NCBI RefSeq assembly: GCF_006345805.1
Contig: NC_043023.1
Location: forward strand, 5,518,001-5,582,000
Length of the DNA: 64,000 bases
Origin: Octopus sinensis
Lineage: Eukaryota
Reading direction: 5' to 3'
Shown: positions 5,561 to 45,478 of the stretch, piece after piece
Layout: each line of letters starts with the position of its first letter
Position numbering within the stretch: the stretch's first letter is position 1
The notes under the pieces: model-generated
Told to the model about the DNA's origin: nothing
What the model saw: only the letters and a program-made list of their open reading frames with translations
Databases searched by the model: none
Position numbers and translations under genes: made by a program

Positions 5561-5561
<1 letters not shown>
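5095..5561 (-). mobile_element. R4/Dong-clade LINE RT fragment next to (TAA)n (duplicate at about 32690-33146)
   Basis: LIAYGRSLQTVDIRRGIFQxDCLSPLIFVLCLIPL..NHLLFMDDLKLY..FSADIRMEFGLRKCGVLVLKRGK; abuts the TTA repeat at 5562-5606. Confidence 0.7.
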
Positions 5562-5607
<46 letters not shown>

Positions 5608-6008: not shown

Positions 6009-6260
6009 CTTCTTTCCCAAGAGTAATAGTTGCATTACAGGAGTTCTTGTCATAGAATCTCCAAAACAAATCCCCTCTCGTTATATTCTCGATGTAGAGA
6101 GTAGAAGTTCTATGAATCTGCCTAACTACATATTTGCCACGATCGCAATATTTCTTATTGCACTCGATACTACGGACCCTATTTCTCCAGACCACAGGCC
6201 TTTCCATATAGGGCATATCTTTAACCTCAAGATCGATACTTTGTCCGAGCACAGGGTTTC
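6009..6260 (-). CDS. Copy 1 Ig-like domain 2 exon (252 nt, open)
   Basis: GNPVLGQSIDLEVKDMPYMERPVVWRNRVRSIECNKKYCDRGKYVVRQIHRTSTLYIENITRGDLFWRFYDKNSCNATITLGKE; AG/GT boundaries. Confidence 0.85.
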
Positions 6261-6575
6261 CTGCAATAAATATATGAATCATTATTATTGACTAGTTTCT
6301 CATATGAAAGATTTCAGGATTCATTTTTATCATCATCATTGTTTCAACACCTACTTTTACATATCTGGAATCAGAGTTTTCTTTATATAAAGATTTGAGA
6401 CACTTCCTCTCGTGATATCACAGGTGATTGTATAACAAAGAGCCAGGACATTAAATAATGACGGTCATGGTAGGTGAACTTCAAGTAAAATTGTATGAGT
6501 TAAGAGAAAAAAATAAAAAAACAGAACTGAAAAGATAGTGTCTAGTTTAAGATGAGAAAAAGGTACTCCACTTAC

Positions 6576-6617
6576 CTTTCAAAATACCTATTTTGTACTC
6601 TTTTTTACATTGCCAAC
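6576..6617 (-). CDS. Copy 1 42-nt micro-exon (WQCKKEYKIGILK)
   Basis: Identical to the copy 2 exon, AG/GT boundaries. Confidence 0.75.
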
Positions 6618-6885
6618 CTATTCAAATAGAAAACAAAAATATTTTCAGATTTTAAATTTTTGATTACTCTTTACTCTTTTACTTGTTTCAGTCATTTGAC
6701 TGCGGCCATGCTGGAGCACCGCCTTTATTCTTTGTAAGCCCAGTACTTATTCTATCGGTCTCTTTTGCCGAACCGCTAAGTAACGGGGACGTAAACACAC
6801 CAGCATCATGTGGTTGGTAAGCAAGCTACTTACCACACAGCCACTCCTGCGCCTATAACAAAGATTATTATTTTTTTTTACAAGA

Positions 6886-8215
6886 TCATCATCATCATTT
6901 AACATCTGCTTTTCATACAAGAATGGTTTGGAGGGATTGACCAGAGCTACCAAAGGGGGGAGCTGCACCAGGCCCCAATTGTCAGATTTAGCATGGTTTC
7001 TATAACTGGATGCCCTCCCTAACATAACCCCTTTACTGAGAGTGCTGGGTGCTTTCCTCTGGTGCCCAAACACATGGCATAGGCATGTGTGCTTTTTACA
7101 AGGTATCAGCACAGAACTCTTGCAGGCCAATCTTCTTCACCAGGGAGACTGCCATTAACACTTCTACTGTGGAGTATGAGGTCTTCTTAGGTCCATCGAT
7201 GGGCTAGGCATCTTGGTCTTACTGTCTGAAAGGTTCAGCATCCTGATGTAATCCTTCAGTACTTTGTTCCATGTCCTCCTGGCTATCCAACTTACATGTG
7301 TTCCACCTAATTTGAGAGATTGGCTCATCTTCATAGAGCTATCAGCATCCATCTGCATCACTTGCCCAAATCAGTGTTGTCTGCTTTCTTACACATTGCA
7401 TCTAATTCCTCTTATGCCTTACTTCTCTCTCAATACACTAGACTCTGTCAAACACGAACCCATACATTACACATCCAGCAGAGCATACTAGCCTCATACC
7501 TCTCTAACCTTCACATATCATCTGCATTAATGGACCACATCTCTTTACCATGTAGAATTGCTGTCCGTATACATGCATCATACAATCTTCCTTTCACTCA
7601 GAGAGAAAAACCAAGAGGTAACAGCTCCCTGAATTTCCTCAATCCTGTTCTTATTCTAGTTATTACACTCTCTCTGTATCCTCCCCCACAACTAATTTGG
7701 TCTCCTAGGTAGCAGAAATTATCCACTACCTCTAATGAGCCACTAGGGCATTTGAGAGAATCAATTTCCTGAGTCTCTCTAGTTTTTATGGATCTTTTAC
7801 ATCTTCCACATACAAACACTACTTTCAATGATTACCTGCCTATTATACCACTGCACTTCTTTTGCATCCATAGCAGACAGTGGGTACACCATATGGAGTT
7901 TCTGCCTACAAATTGGGCTGGGTCACCTACATGAAGAGTGTAGGGTCCTGTCTGTTTTCTTGCTTACTAAGCTCTTAGTCTTTGTTAAATTAACCTTAAG
8001 GTCCTTAGATTCTAGGCTTTGCATCCACATCTGGAATTTCTCTTCTAGCTCTGATATGGACTCTGCTACAGAGGCAAGATCATCAGCATATAATTTTTGT
8101 AGGGGTTGCTGGTCTTCAATTTCTCTGTTATGGCCTAGAGGACAATAACGAACCTTGATAAGCACCTACCTGTACACCAAATTCTTCACTGTACTCATGG
8201 TGAACTCATGTTGAC
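6886..8215 (-). mobile_element. 5'-truncated, decayed RTE-clade LINE (copy 1 intron only)
   Basis: LYADDL..LKVNLTKTK..VDNFCYLGDQISCGGG..RIRTGLRKFRELLPL; (GAT)n tail at 6886-6898. Confidence 0.8.
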
Positions 8216-9464
8216 AGAATTATCTGTTATATAAAATCCATTCTGTCTGTCTGTGTGTGTCTTCTTGGATCTCGGGCATCCTCCATCCGATTGCGCTCAA
8301 ATTTGATATGTAGATACCGACATAATCAGGGCTTCTATAAGTCTTGAAAATATTACAAAAATCGTTTCCAGGTGAGAATGCGATCGATAAAGCCATTTAT
8401 GTCCTGCTTTTCTTCCGTCAACCTGTACATAACTGCACCTTCAATTTTTTGTTGTTTTTGTACTGCTTAAAGGCACGTTTCTTTCCTGCCAAGCTTACTG
8501 TTTAAACCATGTTTGTGTTCTCCCAGTCAACAGCCTAATCATTACTGGTACTTTAAACTCTTCTGTTGCATATTTGTGTGAATAAAATCGCTTTTCTTTG
8601 GAATAGGAAAAAAAAGTCTATCTTTATTTCTTCTTTTGCTGGTGTCTCAAATTTAGGTTAAATCAGTGTTTCTCAAAGGGGAGGCCTATGGGACGGTCGG
8701 ACAAGTTGTTTTGAGAAAATTTGGTTTAAATGTTTGACAACTCAGCACCATCCATTGGACGGGGTGGGGGCGTTTTGCTTGTACATTATATAGTGACAGA
8801 AGGTATTGAAAATGTGATTATATGTTTGAACACTAAGACATCTGCTATTTTCATCATCATCATCATTCCAATACCCATTTAAATGGGTCATATAGAATAT
8901 GTTTAGGTGGACAATAACGAAAAGGGGTGGGCTGAGGACTGAGCCTTGTTGAGCACTTACCTGTACACCAGATTCTTAGTTATACCTGTGGGTAACTCAT
9001 GCAGACAGAGATATACATTAAATACAGTGACATAAGGCATTGAGGCTCTATGTTTAAACACCATTCTTTTACTTGTTTCAGTCATTTGACTGCGGCCATG
9101 CTGGAGCACCACCTTTAGTCGAACAAATCGACCCCAGGACTTATTCTTTGAAGCCTAGTACTTATTCTATCAGTCTCTTTTGCCGAACCGCTAAGTTACG
9201 AGGACATAAACACGCCAGCATCGGTTGCCAAGCGATGTTGTGGGGACAAACACAGACACACAAACACACACATACATATATACGACGGGATTCTTTCAGT
9301 TTCCATCCACCAAATCCATTCACAAGACTTTGGTCAGCCCAAAGCTATAGTAGAAGACACTTGCCCAAGGTGCCATGCAGTGGGACTGAACCTGGAACCA
9401 TGTGGTTTGTGCATGAATTAGAAAGAATTATTATTGTTATTATTAGCAGAAGTCATTTCCTTAC

Positions 9465-9713
9465 CTTCTTCCTTCAAAGAAACCCTTGCATAGCGATATT
9501 TCTTGTCGTGAAAGTCCAATCCACATCTGCCTGTGATATATTTTTTATCAAAATAGTGGATGTATTACCACTCTGCTGAACTTCTACTCTGCCAGATTTA
9601 TAACATGTTCTATCACATTGAAAGCTTTCATTCACATTTTTCCAGGTAACAGGTCGCTCCATGCTGGGTATTTCTTCAGTTTGAAGAGTCATTTCCTCCA
9701 AGTACAAAACTTC
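9465..9713 (-). pseudogene. Copy 1 Ig-like domain 1 exon, 249 nt, two frameshifting deletions
   Basis: GGAGGAAATGAC vs GGAGGAACCATGAC (-2) and TTTCACGAC vs TTTCCGCGAC (-1); the phase-1 reading gives GSFVLGGNDSSN*. Confidence 0.8.
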
Positions 9714-10057
9714 CTGAAATAAATATATATATATCAATATTACAGACTAGTTTCCCATATGAAAGATTTCAGGATTAACTTTTCATCATCATCATTCTCT
9801 CAACATCCATTTTTTCCATGCTTGGGATCAAAATTTTCTTTATATACAATTCAAAACTCTTCCTGACATAATATCTCTCTTTTACTCTTTACTCTTTTAC
9901 TTGTTTCAGTCATTTGACTGTGGCCATGCTGGAGCACCACCTTTAGTCATGCAAATCGACCCCAGGACTTATTCTTTGCCGAACCGCTAAGTTATGGGGA
10001 CGTAAACACACCAGCATCGGTTGTCAAGCGATGTTGGGGGGACAAACACAGACACAG

Positions 10058-10088
<31 letters not shown>

Positions 10089-10470
10089 CATATATACGAC
10101 AGGCTTCTTTCAGTTTCCGTCTACCAAATCCACTCACAAGGCTTTGGTCGGCCCAAGGCTGTACTAGAAGACACTTGCCCAAGGTGCCACGCAGTGGGAC
10201 TGAACCCGGAACCATGTGGTAGGTAAGCAAGCCACTTACCACACAGCCACTCCTGCGCCAGACTATTGTATCCCAGACTATTGTAGAACAAAGAGCCTGG
10301 AGATTAAATGATGATGGTTATGGTTGGATTTCAAATAAAATTGTTAAAAATTATGTTAATCAGGAAAATTTAAAAACAAAAACATGACTATAAACTGAGG
10401 GGAGAGAAAGAAATAAAAGAGAGAACTGAGAAGATAGTGTCCAGTTTAAAATGAGAAACAGGTTTCTTAC

Positions 10471-10509
10471 CTTTTTTAATGATTTTGTAGACTCTTTCAC
10501 ACTGCGAGC
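10471..10509 (-). CDS. Copy 1 39-nt micro-exon (SQCERVYKIIKK)
   Basis: AG/GT boundaries; one synonymous difference from copy 2. Confidence 0.75.
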
Positions 10510-11258
10510 CTAAAAGAGATGAAGACAAAAATATTTTCAAATTTTACATTTTTGAGTATTATTGTCGTCGTCATCGGCGTCATTTAATATCCGTTTTCCA
10601 TGCAGAAATGAGTTGGACAGTTTAACCAGAGTTGACAAGATGGAGAGCTGCACAAGGCTCCAGTGGGATTTAGCATGCTGGGTGCTTTTATTTGGCACCA
10701 CATGAGAGCCTGTTCATGGCACTGCCATGTGCTTTTTGTGTGGCAATGGCACAGAAATCTTGCAGGCCAATCTTCTTCAGCGGGGGAGTGACCTTAACAT
10801 ATCTGCTGTGGAGTACAGCTCTCTTGAGTACAGCAAGGCCCCAAGCATTTTGGTTGTTTGTCATCTTGTCTGAAAGGCAAGTGGGAGATGTAGGGTGTGG
10901 GACGTTGTCTCACAGTTGCTGACAGTAAACCTCATTTCTCCCTCTGACTAAGGTTCATGAAGTATTTATTTACCGTCACGTTACAATACCTTGCTTTGAC
11001 AGGCAGGTTATGATAAATCCAAAAGCATGCGAAGAAAAGTTTGTGTTCTCTTCATTGTTTAGTAGTAAATACAGAAAAAGATAGAATGATATTGTAAGAG
11101 AACAGAATTAGAGCTAGTGACAGTTGTAAGGTGTGGGATGTTGTCTCACAGTTGCTGACAGTAAACTTCATTTCTCCCTCTGACTAAGGTTCTAGCTGGT
11201 CAGCCAATACTGAAGGATTACCCACTAAAAAATAGAGCAAAAACAAATGAAAACTTAC

Positions 11259-11310
11259 CATAAAAAAATGTAAACAAGGCAAAGAAGAAGATGAATAGCT
11301 GACTGTCCAT
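11259..11310 (-). CDS. Copy 1 signal-peptide exon (MDSQLFIFFFALFTFFY-G)
   Basis: Same as copy 2 with one fewer TTC codon; donor G|GTAAGT. Confidence 0.8.
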
Positions 11311-11452
11311 AATCTGAAAAATAAATTTTAAAAAGAGTGAAAACTTGTTGTCTCAGTCCCATCAATGGGAGGAACTGATAATATTTTAGGTCTTATTTTA
11401 ACTCCTTTTATTTTCAGAATTTCAGTCCCAATGTCTTCTGATGTCACTTACT

Positions 11453-11520
11453 CTCTCCTCCATTTCCCAAAACACAAAATAACAAGAAACTATTCATGTC
11501 AGATGTCTACTTAACAATCA
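11453..11520 (-). other. Putative upstream (5' UTR) exon of copy 1; equivalent donor in copy 2 at 39946
   Basis: Donor AGA|GTAAGT at 11452 pairs with the acceptor tttttcag 3 nt before the ATG. Copy 1 alone has an in-frame upstream ATG (MEERI-MDSQ). The 5' boundary is unknown. Confidence 0.45.
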
Positions 11521-12110
11521 TGATGACATTGCTGTGGTATTTAACATTAGGTTATATATATAAAAGGCATCGTGTGTGTGTACGTGAATGTAATTTATGC
11601 ATGTCCACAAATTAGCAAGCATGTCGCTCTAATTTTAGGAGGACATTCGTCATGATCCTAGCTATATTTTCGTCAAATTATTTTACGTATATTTCTAAGT
11701 GTATCTCTACTGATTTCCTATAGAATTTCAGGTAAACAGTGAATCTTATGATGTTTCATATTCAAATATGTTTATGTAAATGATGTTATTAGAGACAGAA
11801 AAGATAGGTAATAGGTGTATGTACATATTTCGAGAGTTGTTGTCCTTTCATCAGCACCACATCCTACCCATCGACTATCCATGATGCCTAAAAGTGTTAC
11901 ACAGTGGGACTGAACCTGGAATCATGTGGTTGGGAAGCAAACTTGCTTGGTTTTAATAGTATTAAAATAGATTGTATTTGTATTTTATGGTCAGATCAAG
12001 GATCTCATCAAATGCTGATGAAACCTGCTGCTCGTATCATGTAAACAAGTGAAGAAAATATATAGTGCATGTGTTTATTTGGCAAAAAAAATTTAAATAA
12101 CCATCCTGAA

Positions 12111-12151
<41 letters not shown>

Positions 12152-12156
<5 letters not shown>

Positions 12157-12366
12157 GAAAAACCACTATTATGCAATTCAAACAATGATAGACATAAACC
12201 AAATCATAAATAAAAAATAAAATATAGTTTAAAACATAACTAGATCACATTCATTTTTGTACTTTTTGTGATCTAGTTATATGTTTTATAATATATTTTA
12301 TTTTTTATCTATGATTTGGTTTACGTCTATCATTGTTTGAAGTGCATAATAGTGGTTTTCCTCTAA
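12152..12366. repeat. Foldback/MITE with arms of about 100 bp and a 17-nt loop
   Basis: ttagagaaaaaaccactattatgca...ctagatcaca / tgtgatctag...tgcataatagtggttttcctctaa. Confidence 0.8.
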
Positions 12367-12453
12367 TTTATATATATTATATATTTATATTGTGAAATTT
12401 GATTTAATACCAAATTGAATTTTTCCTTGTAAGTTTGGAGTTTATACTAAGAT

Positions 12454-12485
<32 letters not shown>

Positions 12486-12574
12486 CCCAATAACTGATGA
12501 GCATGTCCATGTCTTATTTTTTTCCTTATGTTCCTTTCTCATCCTTCTGTGCATTTCTTACTCTTTCCTTCTCT

Positions 12575-14560
12575 CTCTTATCATTTAACATCTGTTCTCC
12601 ACGCTGGCATGGTTGGAATAGTTTGACAGAAGGTGACCAGCTGAAGAGCTGCCTGGGATCCATATTGTTTGTTTTGACATGGTTTTAGTGGCTGGATGCC
12701 CTTCCTAATGCCAACCATTTTACAGAGTATAATGTGTGCCTTTTGTGTGGCACCATCACCAGTGCTTTTCACAAGGTACCAGCAAGAATTTGAACGCTTT
12801 TCTTTTGTGGGACCATGGTTTTAGGATCTCAACTCTGTTGTGGTGGGGCAGCTCAGCTCAAGTATAGCAATGCACCAAATTTCTTCCTGTCATCTCTTTC
12901 ATCAGGTTCAATATTTAAAGATCGGTTTTAAAACATTGACACAAGTCTTCCTGGGTCTCCTTCTTCACACCAACACGCAGCAGATGCATCATATAATCTT
13001 CCTTTCACCCAACAGAGGGAACAGCTCTCGGAAACTTCTCCATCCTATTTTTATTCTAGCAATTACACTTTAAGTACAACCTCCTCCCCCCTACTAATCA
13101 GAACACCTAGGTAACAAAAACTATCTGCAACTTCTATAATCACAGGGACATTTAAGGAAATCAATTTCTCGTGTAGCTGTGGTCGTTATGTCTCCTGTAC
13201 ATCTTCACATACAAACACTAATTTCTCTGTTATCCTTCCAACTATTCCACTACACCTCTTGCCTGCTTATAGCTTGCACTGGGTACATTGAACGGAATTA
13301 CTGCCTACACCCTTCCTACATACTGAATAGGGACATTTAGCTGATGGGCGAAAGGTCCTGTTGGCTTTCTTGCTTATTACAACCTTGGTCTAAATTTACC
13401 TTAAGACCATCTAATTCCAGGTTCTGTTTCCACACCCAGAATTTCTTTTCTAATTCTGTTACATATTCTGCTATGAGGGCAAGGTCATTAGCATGTAGGA
13501 GTTCCTCTCGGCTTCCAGTCTTACATTGCTCTCTTATGGCCCAGAGGATGATGAAGAATAGTAGGGGGCTGGGAACCAACCCTTGGTGGACACCTACCTA
13601 TGCACTAAATTCATCAGTGTACACACGGCTAACTCTCACTTTACTAACAGTACCCCTTTACATGGCCTATACTACTTTCATGGGCCATTTGTCTATCTCT
13701 AGCTTCTTCAGGGACCACTCTATCTCACAGCAGGGATCTCTGTTGAAGGTTTTCTGCAGATCAACAAATGCCAAGTAAAACTGCTTGTTCTTAGCTAAAT
13801 ACTTCTTTTGACTATGAAAATAGCATCTGCAGTATTTCTATCTGGGACAAAATCAAATTGCATTTCAGCCAGCCTAATTCCGCTCCTAATTAATTGTGCT
13901 AAAATTCTCTCTACAACTTTCATCCCCTGTTCCAGCATCTAGATACCTCTATAATTACTTCTAAGGCATCTCACTTGCTCTTGTAGCACCTGACTTCATT
14001 GTCATTAGGGATTACATCTTGAATCACCCAATTCACTACATTGGCGAGACTGTATCCAACTACCAGATATCTTAAGCATTTCGACAGTGACTCCTGATGG
14101 GTCAGGGGCCATTCCTATTTTCATATCTTTAATTGCTTTATCTATCATGCTGGTGTCAACCAGGACAGCTGGTCCCTTTGTAGGGTTCACATAAGGAAGA
14201 TTCCCTTCCTCCCGTTCATTCTCCACATCTAATAGTCCCTTATAGTAGCTCTTCCAAATTTCTTTTTCTCCAGAATCACTAATAGCAAACATACCATTAT
14301 CTGTCCATACACACTTCTCTTCCACATGTTGATTCTCTAACACAAATGTCTGGCAACCCAGAACACCTCAAGTCTCTCATCTTCATATTGTAAACTCCTT
14401 CCTTTCTGCTTCTGCTCTGGCAAGATATACCTGACGTTTAGCTCCTCTTTTAGTTGTCTGATATGGTTGTTTGCTCCCCCAATTCTTCCTGTCATTCCAG
14501 GCTTGTCTTGTCTCTTCCATAGTCATGACTAGCTTGTTCCATCACCAGGACTCTCTTGGG
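12575..14560 (-). mobile_element. Decayed RTE-clade LINE fragment
   Basis: AIKDMKIGMAPDPSGVTVEMLK, PSPLLFFIIL..ELLHANDLALIAE..LKVNL; many stops and frameshifts. Confidence 0.75.
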
Positions 14561-15507
14561 CTGGTGGAGCACAATTGTGCAGCTATGCCAATGGTCTGTG
14601 TTTAACTCACACACGCACTCATACAATAATTCGTGAACAGAAGACAAAAGAAAATTGCAGCAAAGCTGTGGGATAGTGGTAACAGACGTGGGGCGAGATG
14701 CGTAGCCGTATTTCGAAGGCTGGCAGAGACGTTAGCACGCCGGGCGAAATGCGTAGCCGTATTTCGTCTGCCTTTACGTTCTGAGTTCAAATTCCGCCAA
14801 AGTCGACTTTGCCTTTCATTCTTTCGGGGTCGATAAATTAAGTACCAGTTACGCACTGGGGTCGATGTAATCGACTTAATCCATTTCTCTGTCCTTGTTT
14901 GTCCCCTCTATGTTTAGCCCCTTGTGGGTAATAAAGAAACAGACGTGGTGTGCAAGGCCACCATTTAACTTGACATTGCATTTTTATTCTTCTCCTCAGT
15001 TTCATTTTGACATATGCCTTGCGTTCTTATCCTTCTGTGTCACGAATTCAGTGTGCACATGGATATTGCGTATTCATCCTTCTTGCCTTGGTTCCTACTC
15101 AGAACTGCTTTGGGTTCATAACCATCTCACGAACTTCGATGGTTGTGGAATAACTGACGAGATTAGGAAATTATTGCAGTTTGATATCTAGGAGTGATCT
15201 CCCTTCTACGACTTCCTTGACCGAGCAACAAACGGCCACACCCATTAACTGTTGCCTAGGAAACTGATCAGGTCCTTGGTGATGTTCACCGCGGTACATA
15301 ATAACTCCTGATGCTTCATACATTCCACCCATTCCGGTGTTCCTTTTGATGTACGGACTATATTACCTGGATAGCACTACTGGATTATAAACCCTTTTGA
15401 ATTAGACCTGGTAATAATTTTGAGTCTTTGTAAATGACAGGGAAATGGAATATTCGGCGGAATTCTAGTTTAAACTTTCCATATAACTCGTCATAACCTT
15501 CTTCATT

Positions 15508-15932
15508 ATGGCTCCTGTACATCTTCACATACAAACACTAATTTCTCTGTTATCCTTCCAACTATTCCACTACACCTCTTGCCTGCTTATAGCTTGCACT
15601 GGGTACATTGAACGGAATTACTGCCTACACCCTTCCTACATACTGAATAGGGACATTTAGCTGATGGGCGAAAGGTCCTGTTGGGTTTCTTGGTCTTTGC
15701 TAAATTTACCTTAAGACCATCTAATTCCAGGTTCTGTTTCCACACCCAGAATTTCTTTTCTAATTTTGTTACATATTCTGCTATGAGGGCAAGGTCATTA
15801 GCATGTAGGAGTTCCTCTGGGCTTCCAGTCTTACATTGCTCTCTTATGGCCCAGAGGATGATGAAGAATAGTAGGGGGCTGGGAACCAACCCTTGGTAGA
15901 CACCTACCTATGCACTAAATTCATCAGTGTAC
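15508..15932 (-). repeat. Near-identical local copy of RTE fragment 13188-13620
   Basis: Direct sequence match over about 420 nt with one deletion of about 25 nt. Confidence 0.85.
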
Positions 15933-15949
15933 TGTTACTATTATTTATG

Positions 15950-25555: not shown

Positions 25556-25600
25556 ACTTCAGATGGCATGGATGCCGATTACATCGGAATTTATTATATA

Positions 25601-25986
25601 CTAGCAGTATTGCCCGGCGTTGCTCGGGTTTGTAAGGGAAATAACTATATAAGCATTTTTAGAGAGTTGTAGTCAAAAAATAGCAAAAAAATGCATTAAA
25701 ATTGGAAAAAAATGATGGTAATTTTTTTTTTAAATCGTTGACTCATCGTAGACATTTTTAGAGAGTTACCTCCCTTATATAATAGCGAAAAAATGCATTA
25801 AAATTGGAAAAATTGATGGTAAATTATTTTTTAAATCGTAGACACGCACTAATACCCAGAAGGGCTCGATATGAATCACGACTATAAGATACCCAGTTTT
25901 AGTTAAACTGCACCGCAAAATGTGGGTGTAGTTAGGAATCTAAATCGTAGGAGACAGACACACAACCTTACTTTTATATATAAAGA
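25601..25986 (-). mobile_element. Complete short Helitron, same family (3'-truncated plus-strand copies start at 1584 and 28800)
   Basis: Reverse complement shows a TC start, subterminal hairpin and CTAG end. Confidence 0.85.
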
Positions 25987-27292: not shown

Positions 27293-27680
27293 GCAGGAGT
27301 GGCTGTGTGGTAAGTAGCTTGTTTACCAACCACATGGTTCCGGGTTCAGTCCCACTGCGTGGCACCTTGGACAAGTGTCTTCTACTATAGCATCAGGCCA
27401 ACCAAAGCCTTGTGAGTGGATTTGGTAGACAGAAACTGAAAGAAGCCTGTCGTATATGTGTATATATATGTATGTGGGTGTATGTGTTTGTCCCTCTAGC
27501 ATTGCTTGACAACCGATGCTGGTGTGTTTACGTCCCCGTTACTTAGCGGTTCGGCAAAAGAGACCAATAAAATAAGTACTGGGCTTACAAAAGAATAAGT
27601 CCCGGGGTCGATTTGCTCGACTAAAGGCGGTGTTCCAGCATGGCCTCAGTCAAATGACTGAAACAAGTAAAAGAGTAAAG
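27293..27680 (+). mobile_element. Full-length copy of the dominant tRNA-derived octopus SINE
   Basis: ggagtggctgtgtggtaag (A box)..gggttcagtccc (B box)..ggcaccttggacaagtgtc..tail agtaaaagag. Other copies, often partial: 150-470(+), 2641-2810(+), 6668-6853(-), 9068-9410(-), 9880-10258(-), 19935-20225(+), 34240-34460(-), 36060-36400(-), 52555-52710(-), 61685-62135(-), 63150-63527(-). Subfamily name (OR/OK) not assigned. Confidence 0.85.
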
Positions 27681-30177
27681 AGTATATATATATATAGCAG
27701 CAACAACAACAGCTATAATAGGCAGGACACCAATTCCACGCATCCAAAGAAATACATTGGGTGCATGGGAACTTCCTTTAAGAAACATCTCTCCACCATA
27801 GATCCTCCTTCGGAGGGTCATTTATTCACATTATTTTTCAATTTGTCACCCATTTTAATAACAAATCCTGCATGACATTTTATTGGATCCAGATAATTTA
27901 CCTCATTGTTTATCATTAAGGTAGGCCATGGTGTGATTTGAACTTGGAACATTAAAAAGAACTGCTGACTCTTATGCCACAACTTGCTCTCTCTCTTTCC
28001 TCCTGCATCTTGCAGCTCACCCGCGACGGACTGGTGTCCCGTCCAGGTGGGGAACCTATACGCCAAGAGACCGGGAAACCGGCCCTTATGAGCCAGGCAT
28101 GGCTCGAGAAGGAACAAACATACATACAAGCCTCCCTTCTACATGCCACTAATGTTATCCAAAGGAAAGGCAAAGGTCAATACAGCTTGGCGCCAGAGAA
28201 GTTGCATCTAATTTCTACAGCCGAGTGAACTGGAGCAATGTGAAATAAAGTGTCTTGCTCAACACAGCCCAGTCCAAGAATCGAAATCACTACCTCATGA
28301 TTGCAAGCCTGACACTCTAACCACTGAGCAGAGCAATTTATTGCAGATAAATTTTAACAACACCTTATATGGACCCTGGTTGAGAACCACTGAGTTAAGC
28401 AATAGGGTCCATATAATTGATCTGCCCCCTTCCTGAAAATTTCAGGCCTCGTAACCAAAGTAGAAAAGATTATTTAGTTCTGCTTTTTAATGTTCCAAAT
28501 TCAAATCCCTCCATGGCCTACCTTAATGATAAACAATGAGGTAAATTATCTCGATCCAATAAAATGTCATGCAGGATTTGTTCCCTCAGTACGCCGAGTT
28601 CAAATCCTGCGAAGGTCAACTTTGTCTTTCATCCTTTCAAGAATCTATAAAGAAAAGGCAAAATTTTGGTTTAGGCATCCCATAAAACTCCTTATAGCCT
28701 TTTTATTTTTCTTGTATTTTCAGAGAAGTTTTTTTACCAAGACCAAGTCTTCAGTTTGAGAGACACTTTCCCTCCCTTCTACCAATCTTGGAAACCTTAT
28801 CTTTATATATAAAAGTGAAGTTGTGTGTCTGTCTCCTATGATTTAGATTCCTAACTACACCCACATTTTGCGGTGCAGTTTAACTAAAACTGGGTATCTT
28901 ATAGTCGTGATTCATATCGAGCCCTTCTGGGTATTAGTGCGTGTCTACGACTTTAAAAATAATTTACCATCAATTTTTCCCATTTTAATGCATTTTTTCG
29001 CTATTATATAAGGGAAGTAACTCTCTAAAAATGTCTACGACGAGTCAACGATATTTTAAAAAATTTTCTTTTTGCATAACTGTATGAATTCTTGTATGTA
29101 GAACACGAATTCATAAAAATTTTCTGAAAAAAGTTAGAGGTTATATGGAGCTTAAACCAAAAATCTGCCTTTTTTTTGTGTTGACCCTCACCCAAAGAAT
29201 GAATGGTAAAGTTGACCTTGGCTGGATTTGAACACAAAGTATAGTGATTTGGAACAAATACCGACCAGGGATCTCATCCAATGCTCATCTCTAGTCATGG
29301 CCAAACTGCAGCCCATGGGTCCTTCTGAATAGCACCCCTAATAAAAAATTACGTTCAATATATTAAATGTGGAGGCACAATGGCCCAGTTGTTAGGGCAG
29401 CGGACTCGCGGTCTGAGGATTGCGGTTTCGATTTCCAGACCGGGCGTTGTGTGTGTTTATTGAGCGAAAACACCTAAAAGTTCCACAAGACTCCGGCAGG
29501 GGGGGGTGATTCCTGCTGTACTCTTTCACCACTCTTTCTTCTGTTGGCCTGCTCGCTTAGCCAGCTGGGTGGCGTCATTCGAAGGCTAAAGCAATGTGAA
29601 CGCATTGTTACCAGCGATGTGTAACAACATCTGATGGTCTAATCGGTCACGTGCTTATGAAAAAAATCCTTGCCAACCATGACTAGCCTCACATTTTGAG
29701 GGAGGTGTTGGGGGGGTGGTCTTTTCTGTTTCACTTTCACTTTTCAATTCCAATGGTTTTGTTCTAGTTGATTTCAAATTGGTCTATTGATGTAATTTTG
29801 TATGCTAGTCATGGAAATGAAATCTATTTCTGCCTTAAATTAATAAATATAGGTGTAGGCATGGCTGTGTGGTAAGAAGCTTGCTTCCCAAACACATGGT
29901 TCCAGGTTCAGTTCCATTGTGTAGCACCTTGGGAAAGTGTCTCTACTATAGCCTCGGGCCAACTAAAGTCTTGTGAGTGGATTTGGTAGATGTAAACTGA
30001 AAGAATCCAGCTTGTATGTATGTATACACCACCTGTCTTCGTCTTTTGTTTTTTTCGTAAACTCTCCCTATATATATAAAAACGGTAAGATAATAAAAGA
30101 AAGAAAGAGACCTCGATATTATGTAAATAGAGGAATTTATCTGTAAATGTAATATGTGACAATTATTCGGTAGTCAA

Positions 30178-30238
30178 GATAAAACTCCAAGTTTCGGATG
30201 CCGAGGTGGAAATCCATGCCACTATCTCTTAAGTTATC
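30178..30238 (-). ncRNA. Hammerhead motif in copy 2 with core mutation CUUAAGA (G5 to U), predicted inactive
   Basis: Plus strand tctcttaagttatcc vs tctcttcagttatcc in copy 1 (position 30231). Confidence 0.55.
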
Positions 30239-30604
30239 CGGCCATCGGGAAAATGCTATGAAAAATGACCGTTACACAAAGGGAAATTACTGTCTTATTA
30301 ACCGCTATTAAGACAAAAGCACTATTCAAATGACTGCTAAATAAGGTTTGGGGATAAAAAGTTCATAGTATTCGCGTAAGCACACCCGTTTAGACCTACA
30401 CATGTGCGCCCACACACCCATGTCTGTATGCATACATTTATCCACCCTCACTAGAAAAACGTACACATCTTCACTTACATCCTTCATCAAATGTATATGC
30501 ATATAGGTACAAACCCACACACACATGTGGTCATTCGAATAGCACTTTTGTCTTAATAGCGGTCAATAACACAGTCATTTTTCATAGCGTTTTTTCGATG
30601 GCCG

Positions 30605-30665
30605 GATAACTGAAGAGATGGTGGCATGGATTTCCACCTCGGCATCTGAAACCTGGAGTTTTATC
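30605..30665 (+). ncRNA. Hammerhead motif, inverted arm of copy 2, core intact
   Basis: GATAA CTGAAGA ... CATCT GAAA C CTGGA G TT TTATC. Confidence 0.6.
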
Positions 30666-30911
30666 TTGGCTACCAAATAATTGTCACATATTACATTTAC
30701 AGATATGTGGCTTTCTGCTGAAGAGGCAACACCAGTCGTAAATAAATTTATTTTATTTACAAAAGATTGCCAAAACTATGCATAGTCCAGAAAGGAGAGT
30801 GTAAACGTTTTTATTTCTCTTTCCATTTCAGAATTACAACTATTAGTGGTTTGGAGTTTAACTGCTCTTTCTAGTGAGTCGGATGTCCTATTATGGCCAT
30901 CCCTTATATGT

Positions 30912-30965
<54 letters not shown>

Positions 30966-32382
30966 AAATGTGTTGTTGAAAAGGCACATAAATTCAAAAA
31001 CACGTAATTGTTTAAAATACATTTATTTTCAACGATTAGAATTATTTACTTTAATAAAATAAAATAATTTATTTCGAAAGGTTAACCCTTTAGCGTTCGA
31101 ATTAATATGTCATAAGTAATCCTTATTCATTTACATTTTAAAAAATTAATCTGGTATTATCTTGTAGCTTCAAGATTTGAAAGATGTAATTGTTTATTTT
31201 TAGAATGACATGAAAGTGGTAGGGTTGTGGGATGTTGTCTCACAGTTGCTGACATTAAATTTAATTTCTCTTCCTGACCATTGTCTTTAGTAGCTGCCAT
31301 GATTGGGATCATGGTTCTAGCGTTCCGCTCCCTAACTCATGGTAGCTGTCTCTGACTTGGTTGAGTTGTCACGAGCCAACTGACTAACTGTCTTTTTGCT
31401 TGAGGTTCTTGCTTTTATAACTATCCAGGATAGACCTATCGTTGAGAACAACGTGCTTTGTTGGTGGTACTGTGATATCTCTATTCTAGCTTTTGGTGAA
31501 GTAGAAGAGGTTAGAAAGGGTCAAGTGGTGAAGACATTATTTTGGCCTAGCTAAAGGCATCTGGAAAATGTAAAACTGCTGTCAGAGAGAAACCATTGTT
31601 CCATCATCATCATCACCATCATATAACGTCCGTTTTCCATGCTAGCATGGGTTGGACAGTTCAACCAGGGTCCAGGAAGCCAGGAGGCTGCACCAGGCTC
31701 CAGTCTGATCTGGCAGTGTTTCTACAGCTGGATGCCCTTCCTAACAACAACCACTCCGTGAGTGTAGTGGGTGTTTTTATGTGCCACTGGCACAGGGCCA
31801 AATGAGGCCGGCAACGGCCACAATTGGTTGGTGTTTTTTACGTGCCACCAGTACAGAAGCCAGTCAAGGATGACTGTGGTACTGCTACGCCAGCCATTGG
31901 GTATGACTCCATCATGAGCTACCTGGTTTACAATTTGGGTGACCAGACAATAGCCCACGCCACAAGATGTTTTAAGCATCTCAGCAGTGAATCCTGATGG
32001 CCTCATCTGATTTTTGATTTGTTAAAATACTAAATACTGGTGACTTTTTTTCGGTGGTCAAGCTTGTCGTTCTGCTTGATTGGCTTCCCTGTGGAAGTTA
32101 AGCTAGTTTGACCTATGTAGTCCCCACCACACCCTCCACATTTGAGAAAATAGATTAAGTTCTTCAAAGCACATTATGGTAAAAATTTGACTCAATTTAA
32201 ATTTGTATGTTGAGCCCTCAAAGGGTAAGATGCAAGTTCCACAGTTGGGGCCGTTGTACTTTTTGACTTGTAATTTTTTTTCAAGTTCTTGGAGTCGCTT
32301 TTCTCAGGTTTTAGGGATTTGATGCCATCGTGCAAATTATGGGGCACAAAAGAAAAAGCACCAACCAATCCTTTCTTGCATG

Positions 32383-32540
32383 CTATACCAATTTTTTCGA
32401 GATTTTCCATAGGCTAATTATGATGAGAGCAAAAAGCATGACTCCAGCAAAGAAGAATATGCAAAGGCTTATTGCTATACGCTCGCCATTGCTGAGTCCT
32501 TCTGATGTAGCAACTTTAAAATCTTTTGTTCTTTCATTAT
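32383..32540 (-). CDS. Copy 2 stalk, transmembrane and tail exon ending KISKKLV*
   Basis: ttttttgcag| acceptor in phase 1; hydrophobic run IAISLCIFFFAGVMLFALIIISLW followed by basic residues and a stop. Confidence 0.85.
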
Positions 32541-33146
32541 CTGCAAAAAATGAAATGTAAAGCATATATCTTTTGTTTTTGATAAAAAAAAAAATTGTAA
32601 TATTTAGCCACATACCGAAGTTTAGAAATAGCAGCCATAGAACCTTAGCTATTTCTTCTACTCTGGTATCCTTATCCCGTCCATACATTTGATTTTGCCT
32701 CTCTTCAAGACTAACAAACCACACTTCCTCAGTCCGAACTCCATTCTGATATCAGCACTGAAGGTAAATACTGTATCAACGAGGGAACTGACTTGGCTTC
32801 ATAAAGTTTGAGGTCATCCATGAATAACAAATGGTTGACTTTTTGTTGGTGGCTTTCGAATACACACCCAGCTTTTGCTTTCCTCAGAATCAGTGTTAGT
32901 GGTATCAAGCACAGTACAAAGATCAGTGGGGACAGACAGTCCGTTTGGAAGATGCCCCTCCTGATATCTACTGTCTGTAAACTTCTTCCATATGCTATCA
33001 GGTTCGTCCTCCCATTTGCCATACTTTTTCCAAGCAATCGCTCAACATTTGATGCAACGCTTCTGCTCACATGGCAGGACTCCATTTTTTCTTTTCCAGA
33101 TGTTTGTACATTGACTCTGCAAGTATTCCAGTCAATAATTTCCACA

Positions 33147-33179
<33 letters not shown>

Positions 33180-35096
33180 GGCGGTGAGCTGGTAGAATTG
33201 TTAGCACACTGCACAAGATGCATTTTGTTCATTGCTATGTTCCGAGTTCAAATTCTGCCGAGGTTGACTTTGCCTTTAATACTTTCAAGGTCAATAAAAT
33301 AAGTACCAGTTGAACACTGGGGTCGATGTAATCAACTCATTCCTACCTCCTCTAAGCTGCTCTTGTGGAATAATTTGAAATAAAAATACTAATTATAATC
33401 ATTATTATTATGAACTTGAGGTTGTTTCCTGGCAGAATTGTTACTGCACCAGAAAATATATTCAATAGTACCAGCCAAATAGACTCAAATTGATGTAATC
33501 AAGGAACCTGAAACTGATGACTGTGCATGAATTAGAAAGAATTATTATTGTTATTATTAGCAGAAGTCACTTCCTTACCTTCTTTCCCAAGAGTAATAGT
33601 TGCATTACAGGAGTTCTTGTCATAGAATCTCCAAAACAAATCCTCTCTCGTTATATTCTCGATGTAGAGAGTAGAAGTTCTATGAATCTGCCTAACTGCA
33701 TATGTGTCATTCTCGCAATATTCCTTATTGCACTCGATACTACGGACCTTATTTCTCCAGACCACAGGCCTTTCCATATAGGGCATATCTTTAACATAAA
33801 GAGAGATACTTTGTCCGAGCACAGGGTTTCCTGCAATAAATATATGAATCACTATTATTGACTAGTTTCCCGTATGAAAGATTTCAGGATTCATTTTTAT
33901 CATCATCATTGTTTCAACACCTACTTTTACATATCTGGAATCAGAGTTTTCTTTATATAAAGATTTGAGACACTTCCTCTCATGATATCACAGGTGATTG
34001 TATAACAAAGAGCCAGGACATTAAATAATGACGGTCATGGTAGGTGAACTTCAAGTAAAATTGTATGAGTTAAGAGAAAAAAATAAAAAAACAGAACTGA
34101 AAAGATAGTGTCTAGTTTAAGATGAGAAAAAGGTACTCCACTTACCTTTCAAAATACCTATTTTGTACTCTTTTTTACATTGCCAACCTATTCAAATAGA
34201 AAACAAAAATATTTTCAGATTTTAAATTTTTGATTACTCTTTACTCTTTTACTTGTTTCAGTCATTTGACTGCGGCCATGCTGGAGCACCGCATTTAGTC
34301 GAGCAAATCACCCCCGGGACTTATTCTTTGTAAGCCCAGTACTTATTCTATCGGTCTATTTTGCCAAACCGCTAATTAACGGGGACGTAAACACACCAGC
34401 ATCAGTTGTCAAGCAATGCTAGGGAGACAAACACAGACACACAAACATATACACACACATACATATATATATATAATATATATATACAAATTGAGATAGG
34501 GGTTGTAAATGAAACCCTCCATGTGATAACATATATCCAATATACTGCTAGTGAAGTACCCAACAAAGTTAATACATAAATGTTAAGAATTGCGATGCAA
34601 TTAATTCATTTACTGTATTATATGGGCAAAGGTAAAATGTTTTACCACAAATTAATAATACAAAATAAGAAAATGGAGAAATACATCCAAATCAATTATC
34701 AACTACCAGATAATACCCAATCACATACTTTATTAAACCACTACATAAGAACATTAAGGTCAAACATAATAATATAGAACAAAACAGTGTACATGAAGGA
34801 GTAATATGATACAATAAGTATAATATGTATAAGAGGATATAAATAAATATAAATATACACTGCATCTTACAGCTGTTTCGGCCATGCAGTTAATGGTGTC
34901 TCATTTTACTTATATTATCCATGTGTGATAGGTCAATATGTAGTTATAAATGAGACATTTACAAAAATATCCCAAGGCCTCTTCAGAAATTGTGAAATAC
35001 AAACCAAATTAAATCTACACCCATATAAGTGTGCGTACATACCCATAATATATCATGTACACATACATATGAGTGCATATACTCATACTCCTATAC

Positions 35097-35185
<89 letters not shown>

Positions 35186-40336: not shown

Positions 40337-40369
<33 letters not shown>

Positions 40370-40525: not shown

Positions 40526-40559
<34 letters not shown>

Positions 40560-45425: not shown

Positions 45426-45478
<53 letters not shown>

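What the first reader, a model, noticed from the sequence alone, without database searches (positions are those of the whole stretch)
6009..33830. Domain 2 exon: 13 substitutions between paralogues, none synonymous
Hand alignment of 6009-6260 with 33579-33830 gives 13 nucleotide differences, all within 10 altered codons (D/S, E/Y, R/K, K/E, D/E, R/N, G/D, K/T, V/A, G/E) and no purely synonymous change. About 400 nt of intron on each side differs at only about 4-5 sites. Six of the changes cluster in KKYCDRGKYVV vs KEYCENDTYAV, the predicted C'-C''-D surface. Inference: strong diversifying selection on a ligand-binding face.
Basis: partly seen in the sequence, partly recalled or inferred. Interest (0 to 1): 0.9.

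Follow-up and report, generated by a model that had tools for sequence, protein, structure and literature searches.

The report
Fast-diverging duplicated octopus Ig-like gene
Two tandem copies of an uncharacterised, octopus-only membrane protein gene differ at 13 bases in one Ig-like domain exon, all of which change amino acids; this fits adaptive diversification of a surface protein, but the sample is too small and too clustered to prove it.

Summary
Exons 6009-6260 and 33579-33830 (minus strand) differ at 13 bases in 10 codons, with no synonymous change, and each 400-nt flank has 4 mismatches.

The exons are domain 2 of two tandem copies of a six-exon gene in Octopus sinensis. The gene encodes a signal peptide, two Ig-like domains, a stalk and a transmembrane helix. 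The family is found only in octopods, has at least 77 domain exons, and is unannotated.

'Strong diversifying selection' is only partly supported.
- For: the omega=1 likelihood-ratio test gives p=0.0099. The exon diverges 5.2% against 1.4% in non-coding DNA (p=1e-4). Domain 1 and a third haplotype contig repeat the pattern.
- Against: the 13 changes fall in about 5 clusters. Counted as events, the excess is not significant (p=0.05-0.18).
- Copy A carries two frameshifts in domain 1 as assembled.
- The transmembrane exon 1 kb away is 18% divergent, synonymous sites included. This shows mosaic exchange rather than selection alone.
- No donor sequence exists elsewhere in the assembly.

The 'ligand-binding face' is untested. 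The patch does lie on the modelled C'-C''-D edge, and in copy B it creates a new N-glycosylation sequon. The RefSeq model for the locus is a chimera of both copies. Verdict: a real, moderately interesting lead.

The parts
6009..6260 (-). Copy A, exon 5: main exon of Ig-like domain 2 (strands B to G), phase 1-1, 252 nt
   Evidence: AG/GT sites, open frame. AF2 model pLDDT 91.4. It is 100% identical to residues 131-213 of RefSeq protein LOC115225395.
33579..33830 (-). Copy B, exon 5: domain 2. It differs from copy A at 13 nt, giving 10 amino-acid changes.
6128..6153 (-). Cluster of 7 of the 13 differences (K36E, D39E, R40N, G41D, K42T, V44A) on the C'-C''-D edge. The copy B/C11970 state ENDT creates an N-D-T glycosylation sequon.
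   Evidence: The outgroup exon (Logan contig L044) shares D39, G41, K42 and V44 with copy A, so the copy B state is derived. Codon 40 changed on both lineages.
6226..6234 (-). Second cluster: 4 differences in 9 nt (D9S, E11Y), at alternate positions either side of near-invariant L10 on strand B, inferred to face outward
   Evidence: L10 is nearly invariant in the family; positions 9 and 11 are variable.
6576..6617 (-). Copy A, exon 4: 42-nt mini-exon WQCKKEYKIGILK, which forms strand A of domain 2. It is identical in copy B (34146-34187) and in C11970.
   Evidence: (strand 125-129).
9465..9713 (-). Copy A, exon 3: domain 1. It has a 2-bp and a 1-bp deletion relative to copy B and C11970, which gives premature stops as assembled.
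   Evidence: Frame-corrected comparison with B gives 7 N: 1 S.
38537..38788 (-). Copy B, exon 3: domain 1, intact, 252 nt
10471..10509 (-). Copy A, exon 2: mini-exon SQCERVYKIIKK, which forms strand A of domain 1. The copy B equivalent is 38957-38995 and differs by one synonymous change.
11259..11310 (-). Copy A, exon 1 coding part: signal peptide, with a 3-bp in-frame deletion relative to copy B (39751-39805)
4795..4937 (-). Copy A, exon 6 coding part: stalk plus C-terminal TM helix, ending ...LWRM*
   Evidence: (helix 231-259).
32383..32540 (-). Copy B, exon 6 coding part: stalk plus TM, ending ...LWKISKKLV*. It has 26 nt differences from copy A in 141 nt (21 N : 5 S, dS 0.185).
4796..5090 (.). 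High-divergence tract between the copies: about 37 mismatches in about 295 bp. It has a sharp edge at the stop codon and extends about 150 bp into the intron.
   Evidence: C11970 is B-like over most of the tract but A-like at its last 3 variable sites.
156..18058 (.). Duplicated unit A of the tandem segmental duplication. It is interrupted by copy-specific insertions.
   Evidence: Non-coding mismatch to unit B is 1.41%.
27380..44586 (.). Duplicated unit B. It encodes an intact 265-aa protein.

Best explanation
The window holds a tandem segmental duplication in Octopus sinensis: about 17-18 kb of homologous sequence repeated at an offset of about 27.5 kb. The duplicated unit carries a small six-exon gene on the minus strand.

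Each copy encodes a signal peptide and two highly divergent Ig-like domains. Each domain is built from a Cys-containing mini-exon (strand A) plus a 252-nt phase 1-1 exon (strands B-G). A disordered stalk and a C-terminal transmembrane helix with almost no cytoplasmic tail follow. The gene belongs to an unannotated family found only in octopods.

Between the two copies, and between them and a third haplotype contig, the two Ig-domain exons accumulate amino-acid replacements about 3-5 times faster than the surrounding introns accumulate any change. The signal-peptide exon and the mini-exons stay essentially identical.

The most likely cause is positive or balancing (diversifying) selection on exposed positions of the Ig-like domains: outward-facing B-strand residues, the C'-C''-D edge, and gain or loss of N-glycan sites. 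This acts against a background of sequence exchange between copies and alleles that keeps the introns similar.

Shown: the gene structure, the fold, the counts and the mosaicism. Inferred: that selection rather than mutation pattern drives the excess, and that the surface is a recognition surface.
For: - D2 A-B is 13 N: 0 S, A-C11970 is 11 N: 0 S, B-C11970 is 6 N: 0 S. D1 is 7:1, 9:1 and 15:2.
- GY94 LRT against omega = 1: D2 p = 0.0099; D1+D2 omega = 5.8, p = 0.028.
- Exon versus non-coding divergence: D2 5.16% against 1.41%, p = 1.1e-4; D1 A-B p = 0.03. D1 copy A versus C11970: 3.9% against 0.97%, p = 3.7e-4.
- The signal-peptide, exon-2 and linker exons carry 0-1 changes.
- If the exon were simply an older neutral tract, about 3 synonymous changes would be expected. 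None is seen.
- Variable sites fall on family-variable columns (p = 0.006) and on modelled strand-B positions 9 and 11 (either side of near-invariant L10, so inferred to face outward) and the C'-C''-D edge.
- With an outgroup, codon 40 changed on both lineages, and copy B gained an N-D-T sequon.
- The copy B patch is identical in two independent contigs, and copy A's patch matches an independent outgroup at 4 of 6 residues. Neither is therefore a random assembly error.
- No donor for conversion exists elsewhere in the 2.7-Gb assembly.
- Copy B is intact, and copy A's D2 and TM exons are the ones used in the RefSeq protein.
Against: - The 13 changes form about 5 clusters. Treated as events, the exon excess is p = 0.05 (merge at 3 bp or less) to 0.18 (6 bp or less), and P(all non-synonymous) rises to 0.10-0.24 (0.10-0.14 computed for 7-8 events; 0.24 is my extrapolation to 5 events). 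Codon-model tests are known to give false positives with multi-nucleotide changes (my own knowledge of the literature).
- With a local +/-1.5 kb control the excess is p = 0.08.
- Copy A has frameshifts in D1, so it may be decaying.
- The TM exon shows that whole tracts of old divergence, including synonymous and intronic sites, exist at this locus.
- Other close pairs in the family have exon divergence about equal to flank divergence, which fits omega near 1.
- Only three sequences are available. There are no population or expression data.
Confidence: 0.5

Rival explanations
1. Neutral or relaxed evolution combined with clustered mutation or micro-conversion. The Ig-like exons are under little constraint (omega near 1, as in the rest of the family, and copy A may be a pseudogene). 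The 13 differences would then arise from 4-5 multi-nucleotide events or short exchange tracts from a diverged allele or paralogue that is not in the assembly. Such events almost always change amino acids, so 13:0 would not indicate selection.
For: - Clusters of 7 nt in 26 bp and 4 nt in 9 bp, including three consecutive bases.
- The exon excess is lost when clusters are merged.
- A clear exchange tract lies 1 kb away in the TM exon, with dS = 0.185 and intron spill-over, and C11970 is a B/A mosaic there.
- Copy A's D1 exon is frameshifted.
- Family pairs have exon divergence about equal to flank divergence.
- Variable sites are those least conserved in the family.
Against: - No donor within 3 mismatches exists anywhere in the assembly for either patch, the whole exon or the TM exon. 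The single 2-mismatch 22-mer hit, on contig C19, is within chance expectation.
- A tract from a diverged donor should bring synonymous differences, as in TM (21:5), yet D2 has 0 of 13 and D1+D2 across three haplotypes have 2 of about 32 (p = 0.007).
- Non-coding mismatches are far less clustered than the exon's (123 reduce to 101 events, against 13 to 5).
- The outgroup splits the 'triple' change between two lineages.
- D1 A-C11970 changes are more dispersed and still in excess.
Confidence: 0.33
2. Old duplication with concerted evolution. The copies are much older than 1.4% suggests. Inter-copy gene conversion keeps introns and most exons alike, and the divergent islands (TM tract, D1/D2 patches) are places that conversion has not erased. 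The reason would be either chance or selection against homogenisation, as with primate opsin or MHC exons.
For: - The TM tract is 12-18% divergent inside about 1.4% flanks.
- C11970 is mosaic between A-type and B-type in TM.
- Non-coding divergence between the paralogues (1.4%) is about the same as between the putative haplotypes (1.0-1.2%).
- The internal D1/D2 module duplication is old, at 73% identity.
Against: D2 and D1 have dS of about 0-0.02, so at synonymous sites they look as young as the introns. Their replacements must then be either recent or individually protected by selection, which merges this rival into the main explanation. Chance alone does not explain why the islands coincide with the two domain exons and the TM exon.
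Confidence: 0.12
3. Assembly artefact. The 'paralogues' are two haplotypes wrongly placed in tandem, or the differences are consensus errors.
For: The assembly has 13,516 contigs and contains apparent haplotigs, for example C11970 and identical exon pairs on unplaced contigs. Indels that look like long-read errors are present: a 1-bp loss in an A-run in C11970 exon 2 and perhaps the copy A D1 frameshifts.
Against: - The window has no Ns between the copies.
- An independent contig, C11970, spans from copy A's domain 1 through the inter-copy region to copy B's domain 2.
- The differences are substitutions, are reproduced in C11970, and partly match an outgroup from an unrelated read set.
- About 9 kb of sequence lies between the units, with copy-specific insertions.
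Confidence: 0.05

Closest known systems
Tandemly duplicated vertebrate Ig-domain receptor families under positive selection with inter-copy exchange (KIR/LILR, CEACAM/PSG, SIRP)
   Same: Type I membrane proteins made of Ig-like domains encoded by phase-1 exons. They sit in tandem arrays, show an excess of replacements in extracellular domain exons and patchy exchange between copies, include pseudogenised members, and gain or lose glycan sites. CEACAM1 is among the Foldseek matches.
   Different: There is no detectable sequence homology: Pfam Ig models are below threshold. The canonical B-F disulfide is absent, and each domain is split into a mini-exon plus a main exon. The cytoplasmic tail is nearly absent, with no ITIM/ITAM-type signalling region in the sequence. 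No ligand, expression or immune role is known. The comparison with these families' evolution is from my own knowledge, not tested here.
Two-Ig type I membrane proteins of the basigin/embigin/neuroplastin and Dpr/DIP kind
   Same: Same architecture: signal peptide, two Ig-like domains, a single TM helix and a short tail. Basigin, embigin and Dpr4 are structural matches.
   Different: Those families are conserved across phyla and evolve under purifying selection (my knowledge). This family is restricted to octopods and is only about 35-60% identical between closest relatives.
Exon-more-divergent-than-intron paralogues maintained against gene conversion (primate red/green opsin, MHC class I/II exons)
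   Same: Introns of the duplicates are nearly identical while specific exons carry the differences. There is evidence of exchange between copies.
   Different: In those cases function and selected sites are known and many sequences support the inference. Here there are only three sequences and no functional data. The analogy is recalled from the literature, not tested.
Molluscan diversified IgSF immune molecules (Biomphalaria FREPs)
   Same: Mollusc, IgSF domains, multigene family, high sequence diversity.
   Different: There is no fibrinogen domain. The protein is membrane-anchored rather than secreted. There is no evidence of somatic diversification and no sequence similarity was found. Profile hits outside octopods are marginal, for example one Haliotis protein.

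Membership tests
Immunoglobulin superfamily (Ig-like domain) | Two-sheet Greek-key beta-sandwich of 7-9 strands | tested here: met
   AF2 domain model: pLDDT 91.4, pTM 0.83, 8 strands. The full-length model has two 9-strand domains. All top Foldseek PDB matches are Ig domains: titin I-set, VL, shark NAR, basigin, Kirrel, NCAM2, Dpr4, CEACAM1. TM-scores are 0.5-0.7 for the single domain, and E-values are 3e-7 to 1e-5 for the tandem.
Immunoglobulin superfamily (Ig-like domain) | Invariant Trp in strand C and the conserved D-x-x-x-(Y/F/W) motif leading into strand F | tested here: met
   W24, W66 and F68 are invariant and D70 is nearly invariant in 21 family domains. W24 lies in modelled strand C (22-25).
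Immunoglobulin superfamily (Ig-like domain) | Canonical intersheet disulfide between strand B and strand F cysteines | tested here: not met
   Strand B (IDLEV) and strand F (FWRFY) of D2 have no cysteine. The cysteines lie at C33/C38 (C'-C''), at C74, and in the mini-exon. Many bona fide Ig-like domains (CD2, titin) also lack this bond (my knowledge).
Immunoglobulin superfamily (Ig-like domain) | Significant match to a curated Ig sequence model (Pfam I-set / V-set / Ig_2 / Ig_3) | tested here: not met
   The D2 exon and P0001 have no Ig hit. Relatives reach I-set at 23.6, 21.7, 16.7 and 14.1 bits against a cut-off of 23.7. The PDB profile search gives only titin at E = 0.25. Membership therefore rests on fold, not sequence.
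Genes under diversifying (positive) selection | dN/dS significantly above 1 | tested here: inconclusive
   Pairwise GY94 LRT: p = 0.0099 for D2 and 0.028 for D1+D2. The result is not robust if clustered changes count as single events.
Genes under diversifying (positive) selection | Replacement rate exceeds the neutral (intron) rate | tested here: inconclusive
   D2 dN is 0.068 against non-coding 0.014 (p = 1.1e-4). D1 A-C11970 gives p = 3.7e-4. With the local control p = 0.08, and event-merged p = 0.05-0.18.
Genes under diversifying (positive) selection | Site-model or McDonald-Kreitman support from many paralogues, alleles and orthologues | not testable with these tools
   Only three sequences plus one 60%-identical outgroup could be found. 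No population data or O. vulgaris orthologue was reachable.
Interlocus gene-conversion mosaic | Discrete tract with sharply different divergence, including silent and intronic sites | tested here: met
   This holds for the TM tract 4796-5090: 18% in the coding part (dS 0.185) and 11/152 in the adjacent intron, against 0/159 in the 3'UTR just beyond the stop codon. It does not hold for D2 (dS = 0).
Interlocus gene-conversion mosaic | Identifiable donor sequence | tested here: not met
   Whole-genome DNA and pattern searches find only copies A, B and C11970.
Pseudogene (copy A) | Disabling mutation in the coding sequence | tested here: inconclusive
   The -2 and -1 bp indels in the copy A D1 exon give premature stops. 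All other exons and splice sites are intact, and a transcript skipping D1 stays in frame. The putative allele on C11970 has an intact D1. Assembly indel error cannot be excluded.

The most novel reading that the evidence does not exclude
The locus is one sampled corner of an undescribed receptor system restricted to octopods. This would be a family of small membrane proteins with divergent, cysteine-atypical Ig-like domains: at least 77 domain exons, large arrays on the same chromosome, and loci with a dozen annotated isoforms. Domain exons would be diversified by replacement-biased change, glycan-site turnover and patchwise exchange between tandem copies and alleles, possibly with splicing across neighbouring copies as in the RefSeq chimera. 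Such a system could serve as a polymorphic recognition repertoire (immune, self/non-self or cell-identity) in cephalopods.
Probability: 0.2. Interest if true: 0.75.

Novelty: new member of a known kind. Interest (0 to 1): 0.42.

Why it matters
Cephalopods have no described variable or polymorphic recognition receptors. The known large octopus gene expansions are protocadherins, C2H2 zinc fingers and GPCRs (my own knowledge).

A family of Ig-like surface proteins restricted to octopods, whose domain exons change amino acids faster than introns change at all, would be a concrete candidate for such a role. This holds both between fresh duplicates and between haplotypes. It is testable with data that already exist: raw reads, RNA-seq and the genomes of related octopus species.

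If the excess instead proves to come from clustered mutation or exchange, the locus is still useful in two ways. It is a clear case of a false-positive-prone dN/dS signal, and it shows a RefSeq model stitched together from two paralogues.

Tried and rejected
- **Pfam on the D2 exon.** Only a spurious YafO hit at E = 0.037.
- **Donor search for gene conversion.** I searched the whole genome with the TM exon of A and of B, the whole D2 exon, both 33-nt patch variants (up to 3 mismatches) and a 22-mer (up to 2 mismatches). Nothing turned up beyond A, B, C11970 and one chance-level hit on C19.
- **More alleles or orthologues.** Word-indexed searches with the two-domain protein and with the D2 open frame returned only the RefSeq model and one Logan contig of unknown species at 60% identity. 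The nearest O. bimaculoides gene (LOC106872842) has a 58%-identical D1, a TM exon and no D2-type exon, so it gives no usable orthologue.
- **Is exon divergence above intron divergence a family-wide rule?** It is not. Only L023-L029 shows it (p = 0.018), and the other close pairs have exon about equal to flank. My first global-alignment version of this test was spoiled by indels, so I redid it with local HSPs.
- **C11970 as an outgroup.** Rejected, because it is collinear with window 8899-34404. It is therefore most likely the other haplotype: allelic to copy A at D1 and to copy B at D2.
- **Long open frames in family loci.** These were microsatellite read-through, not multi-domain exons.
- **Literature.** No paper mentions the LOC identifiers or the SRR run, and general searches found nothing on this family.
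- **Exon-precise conversion from spliced cDNA.** Rejected, because the TM tract ends at the stop codon inside the exon and runs into the intron.

Full report
**1. The observation**

- The two stretches (6009-6260 and 33579-33830) are each 252 nt and align without gaps. They differ at 13 positions: 6074, 6128, 6134, 6137, 6140-6142, 6153, 6179, 6226, 6228, 6233 and 6234.
- Read on the minus strand with a phase-1 start, both are open and bounded by AG and GT.
Nei-Gojobori counting gives 13 non-synonymous and 0 synonymous differences, over 199.8 N and 49.2 S sites.
- The 400 nt on either side carry 4 mismatches each.

**2. What the sequence is**

- The window is C27:5518001-5582000 of a 2.72-Gb, 13,516-contig assembly.
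- A protein search identified the locus as 'uncharacterized protein LOC115225395 [Octopus sinensis]', 260 aa.
- Self-comparison shows a tandem segmental duplication. Unit A is about 156-18058 and unit B about 27380-44586. They are interrupted by copy-specific insertions and have repeat elements at the edges.
- Each unit carries the same six-exon gene on the minus strand:

| Exon | Content | Copy A | Copy B |
|---|---|---|---|
| 1 | signal peptide | 11259-11310 | 39751-39805 |
| 2 | 39-nt mini-exon SQCERVYKIIKK | 10471-10509 | 38957-38995 |
| 3 | domain 1 | 9465-9713 | 38537-38788 |
| 4 | 42-nt mini-exon WQCKKEYKIGILK | 6576-6617 | 34146-34187 |
| 5 | domain 2 (the finding) | 6009-6260 | 33579-33830 |
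| 6 | stalk + TM coding part | 4795-4937 | 32383-32540 |

- All internal introns are phase 1 with canonical splice sites.
- Copy B splices into an intact 265-aa protein.
- Copy A, as assembled, has a 2-bp and a 1-bp deletion in domain 1 that create premature stops. Skipping that exon would keep the frame.
- The RefSeq protein equals B exons 1-4 joined to A exons 5-6, letter for letter. The public model is therefore a chimera of the two paralogues. Whether it reflects real cross-copy splicing cannot be decided here.

**3. Fold and family**

- Pfam finds nothing in the exon or the protein.
- A six-frame search of the genome finds at least 77 related domain exons. Most are on the same chromosome, in clusters at 3.2-3.3, 11-12.3, 15.9-16.9 and 19.0-19.1 Mb, plus unplaced contigs.
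- A profile of 21 family domains, scored against 1.84 billion representative proteins, finds only 43 hits. The roughly 30 convincing ones that I looked up are all from octopods (O. sinensis, O. bimaculoides, O. vulgaris, Argonauta hians), and all are 'uncharacterized'.
- AlphaFold2 with that alignment gives a confident eight-strand sandwich for the exon (pLDDT 91.4).
- For the full protein (pLDDT 82.9) the model shows:
  - a signal helix;
  - two nine-strand domains whose first strand is encoded by the mini-exons;
  - a disordered stalk;
  - a C-terminal helix.
- Foldseek returns only Ig-type domains: titin I-set, antibody VL, shark NAR, basigin/embigin, Kirrel, NCAM2, Dpr4 and CEACAM1.
- Relatives reach just below the Pfam I-set cut-off, 23.6 against 23.7 bits.
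- The canonical B-F disulfide is absent.
- The protein is thus an Ig-like domain by fold and a new family by sequence.
Residues 35-45 span the modelled C' end, a short C'' strand and the start of D.

**4. Is the excess of replacements real evidence of selection?**

Evidence in favour:
- A GY94 pairwise likelihood-ratio test rejects omega = 1 for D2 (p = 0.0099) and for D1+D2 (omega = 5.8, p = 0.028).
- With the transition/transversion ratio measured in the non-coding part (68:55), the chance that 13 independent mutations all change the protein is 0.024.
- Aligned non-coding DNA of the duplication differs at 123/8710 = 1.41%. The exon's 5.16% is in excess (p = 1.1e-4), and domain 1 shows 3.15% (p = 0.03).
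- A third sequence exists on unplaced contig C11970. It is collinear with window 8899-34404 apart from an inversion, and so is most likely the other haplotype.
  - Its D2 differs from copy B by 6 N : 0 S and from copy A by 11 N : 0 S.
  - Its D1 differs from copy A by 9 N: 1 S, at 3.9% against 0.97% in 6.9 kb of non-coding DNA (p = 3.7e-4).
- The signal-peptide exon and the mini-exons carry 0-1 changes.
- The variable positions are those that also vary most across the family (p = 0.006). They include positions 9 and 11 on strand B, either side of near-invariant L10 and therefore inferred to face outward.

**5. Reasons for caution**

- The 13 differences are strongly clustered: 7 in 26 bp and 4 in 9 bp, including three consecutive bases.
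  - Merging mismatches within 3 bp leaves 7 events (exon excess p = 0.05). Merging within 6 bp leaves 5 events (p = 0.18).
  - With 5-8 events, 'all non-synonymous' is no longer unusual (p = 0.10-0.24; computes 0.10-0.14 for 7-8 events, and 0.24 is my extrapolation to 5 events).
  - From my own knowledge, codon-model tests are prone to false positives when multi-nucleotide changes occur.
- The result depends on the control. Within +/-1.5 kb, which includes the TM tract, p = 0.08.
- The partner copy A may be degenerating, given the D1 frameshifts.
- The last exon tells a different story.
  - Its coding part differs at 26 of 141 nt (21 N : 5 S; dS 0.185, dN 0.219, omega 1.28, not significant).
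  - The adjacent 150 bp of intron is also elevated (11/152).
  - The 159 bp of 3'UTR just past the stop codon are identical.
  - That is a tract of much older divergence embedded in young flanks, so it is a mosaic. C11970 is B-type over most of the tract and A-type at its end. Exchange between sequence types therefore happens at this locus.
- Other close pairs in the family show far more replacement than synonymous changes (for example 10:0, 15:1, 9:1, 7:3). Usually, though, exon divergence is similar to flank divergence, which suggests omega near 1. Only one further pair shows an exon excess.

**6. Arguments against the neutral, patch-exchange rival**

- No donor for either D2 patch, the whole exon or either TM version exists elsewhere in the assembly.
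- A tract imported from a diverged relative should carry synonymous differences, as the TM tract does. D2 has none, and D1+D2 over the three sequences have about 2 in 32 (p = 0.007).
- Non-coding mismatches are far less clustered than the exon's.
- An outgroup exon from an unrelated read set (Logan contig of SRR11869388, 60% identical, same mini-exon plus D2-type exon layout) informs polarity.
  - It shares D39, G41, K42 and V44 with copy A, so the ENDT.A state of copy B and C11970 is derived.
  - The derived state creates an N-D-T glycosylation sequon.
  - Codon 40 appears to have changed on both lineages (H to R and H to N), which splits the 'triple' change into separate events.
  - This polarisation rests on a distant outgroup and is tentative.

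**7. Artefact**

- The window contains no Ns.
- C11970 independently spans the junction between the units.
- The copy B patch is identical in two contigs.
- The differences are substitutions rather than the indels typical of long-read errors.
- A false duplication or consensus error is therefore unlikely, though only read mapping can exclude it.

**8. Verdict**

- The finding is real and is more than a chance pattern under standard tests. 'Strong diversifying selection on a ligand-binding face' overstates what three sequences with clustered changes can show.
- My best reading, at about 0.5, is diversifying selection on exposed parts of both Ig-like domains, acting on copies and alleles that also exchange sequence.
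- The main rival, at about 0.33, is unconstrained evolution with clustered mutations or short exchange tracts.
- The phenomenon belongs to a well-known kind: fast-evolving tandem Ig-like receptor genes.
- The family itself is undescribed and restricted to octopods, which gives the locus moderate interest as a lead.

Noticed in passing
window 4795-39805 (minus strand); RefSeq protein LOC115225395: The only annotated protein for this locus is a chimera. It takes exons 1-4 (signal peptide, mini-exon, domain 1, linker) from copy B and exons 5-6 (domain 2, TM) from copy A, which implies a splice that skips roughly 27 kb, including B's own D2/TM and A's first four exons. This is either an annotation artefact forced by the frameshift in copy A's domain 1, or real cross-copy splicing.
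   Followed up: partly
window 9465-9713 (minus strand): Copy A's domain-1 exon lacks 2 bp (GGAGGAA--ATG) and 1 bp (CTTT-CAC) relative to copy B and C11970. The net loss is 3 bp, but about 185 nt are read out of frame with six stops. It is either a polymorphic null allele or residual assembly indels.
   Followed up: partly
window 4796-5090 versus 32399-32690: The TM/stalk exon and about 150 bp of upstream intron are 12-18% divergent between copies whose flanks differ by about 1.4%. There is a razor-sharp boundary at the stop codon. Copy A and C11970 have a premature TAG (ending ...LWRM*) where copy B reads on to ...LWKISKKLV*, which resembles the O. bimaculoides relative (FWYKSK...).
   Followed up: partly
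G000 contig C11970 (loci L034-L037) versus window 8899-34404: This unplaced 38.6-kb contig is collinear with the region from A-D1 to B-D2 at 97-99% identity. It carries window segment 22342-26033 in inverted orientation, and an expanded array of the 95-bp tandem repeat found at window 24419-24860. It is probably the alternative haplotype with a structural polymorphism. The inverted segment is flanked by inverted copies of a 1.1-kb repeat (749-1851, 25720-26824, 27962-29063).
   Followed up: partly
window 5951-6408 versus 9407-9864: The domain-1 and domain-2 exons with their immediate flanks are 73% identical at the DNA level, and each is preceded by a Cys-containing mini-exon. The two-domain gene therefore arose by internal duplication of a two-exon module.
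   Followed up: no
D1 residue 57 (A: NIS, B and C11970: YIS); D2 residues 40-42 (A: RGK, B and C11970: NDT); D2 residues 61-63: Several differences create or destroy N-glycosylation sequons. Copy A has an extra N-I-S in domain 1, and copy B and C11970 have an extra N-D-T in domain 2. Copy A and C11970 carry an R-G-D tripeptide in the E-F turn of domain 2 where copy B has R-E-D.
   Followed up: no
G000 C27:16.1-16.9 Mb (for example loci L010, L012, L016-L018, L023, L025, L029): This is the largest array of the same Ig-like exon family. One locus there (LOC115225115) has at least 12 annotated isoforms with four domains. Two of its adjacent domain exons (L023/L029) differ by 9 N : 1 S while 1,459 bp upstream differ at 6 sites.
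   Followed up: partly
window 5142-5561 (-), 7598-8165 (-), 13337-13597 and 15587-15907 (-), 46386-48100 (-), 60468-61660 (-): These are open frames that resemble reverse transcriptase and transposase genes, so they are likely retrotransposon and DNA-transposon fragments. I judged this by eye from the translations and ran no domain search on them. The fragment in the D2-TM intron is present in both copies, so it predates the duplication. SINE-like elements are frequent (for example 156-469, 9065-9416, 27300-27680, 63150-63526) and mark the duplication edge.
   Followed up: no
window 48272-49307 and 45369-45556: There is a long (TAGA)n/(GATA)n microsatellite of about 260 units. It abuts the reverse-transcriptase-like frame and produces spurious long open frames.
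   Followed up: no
locus L043 (O. bimaculoides CM046629.1:9467593-9507635): The closest O. bimaculoides gene (LOC106872842) has the same signal-peptide, SQCEKVYKIFVK mini-exon and D1 layout, and a TM exon, but no D2-type exon. Its D1 is only 58% identical, so there has been either very fast divergence or gene turnover between Octopus species.
   Followed up: partly
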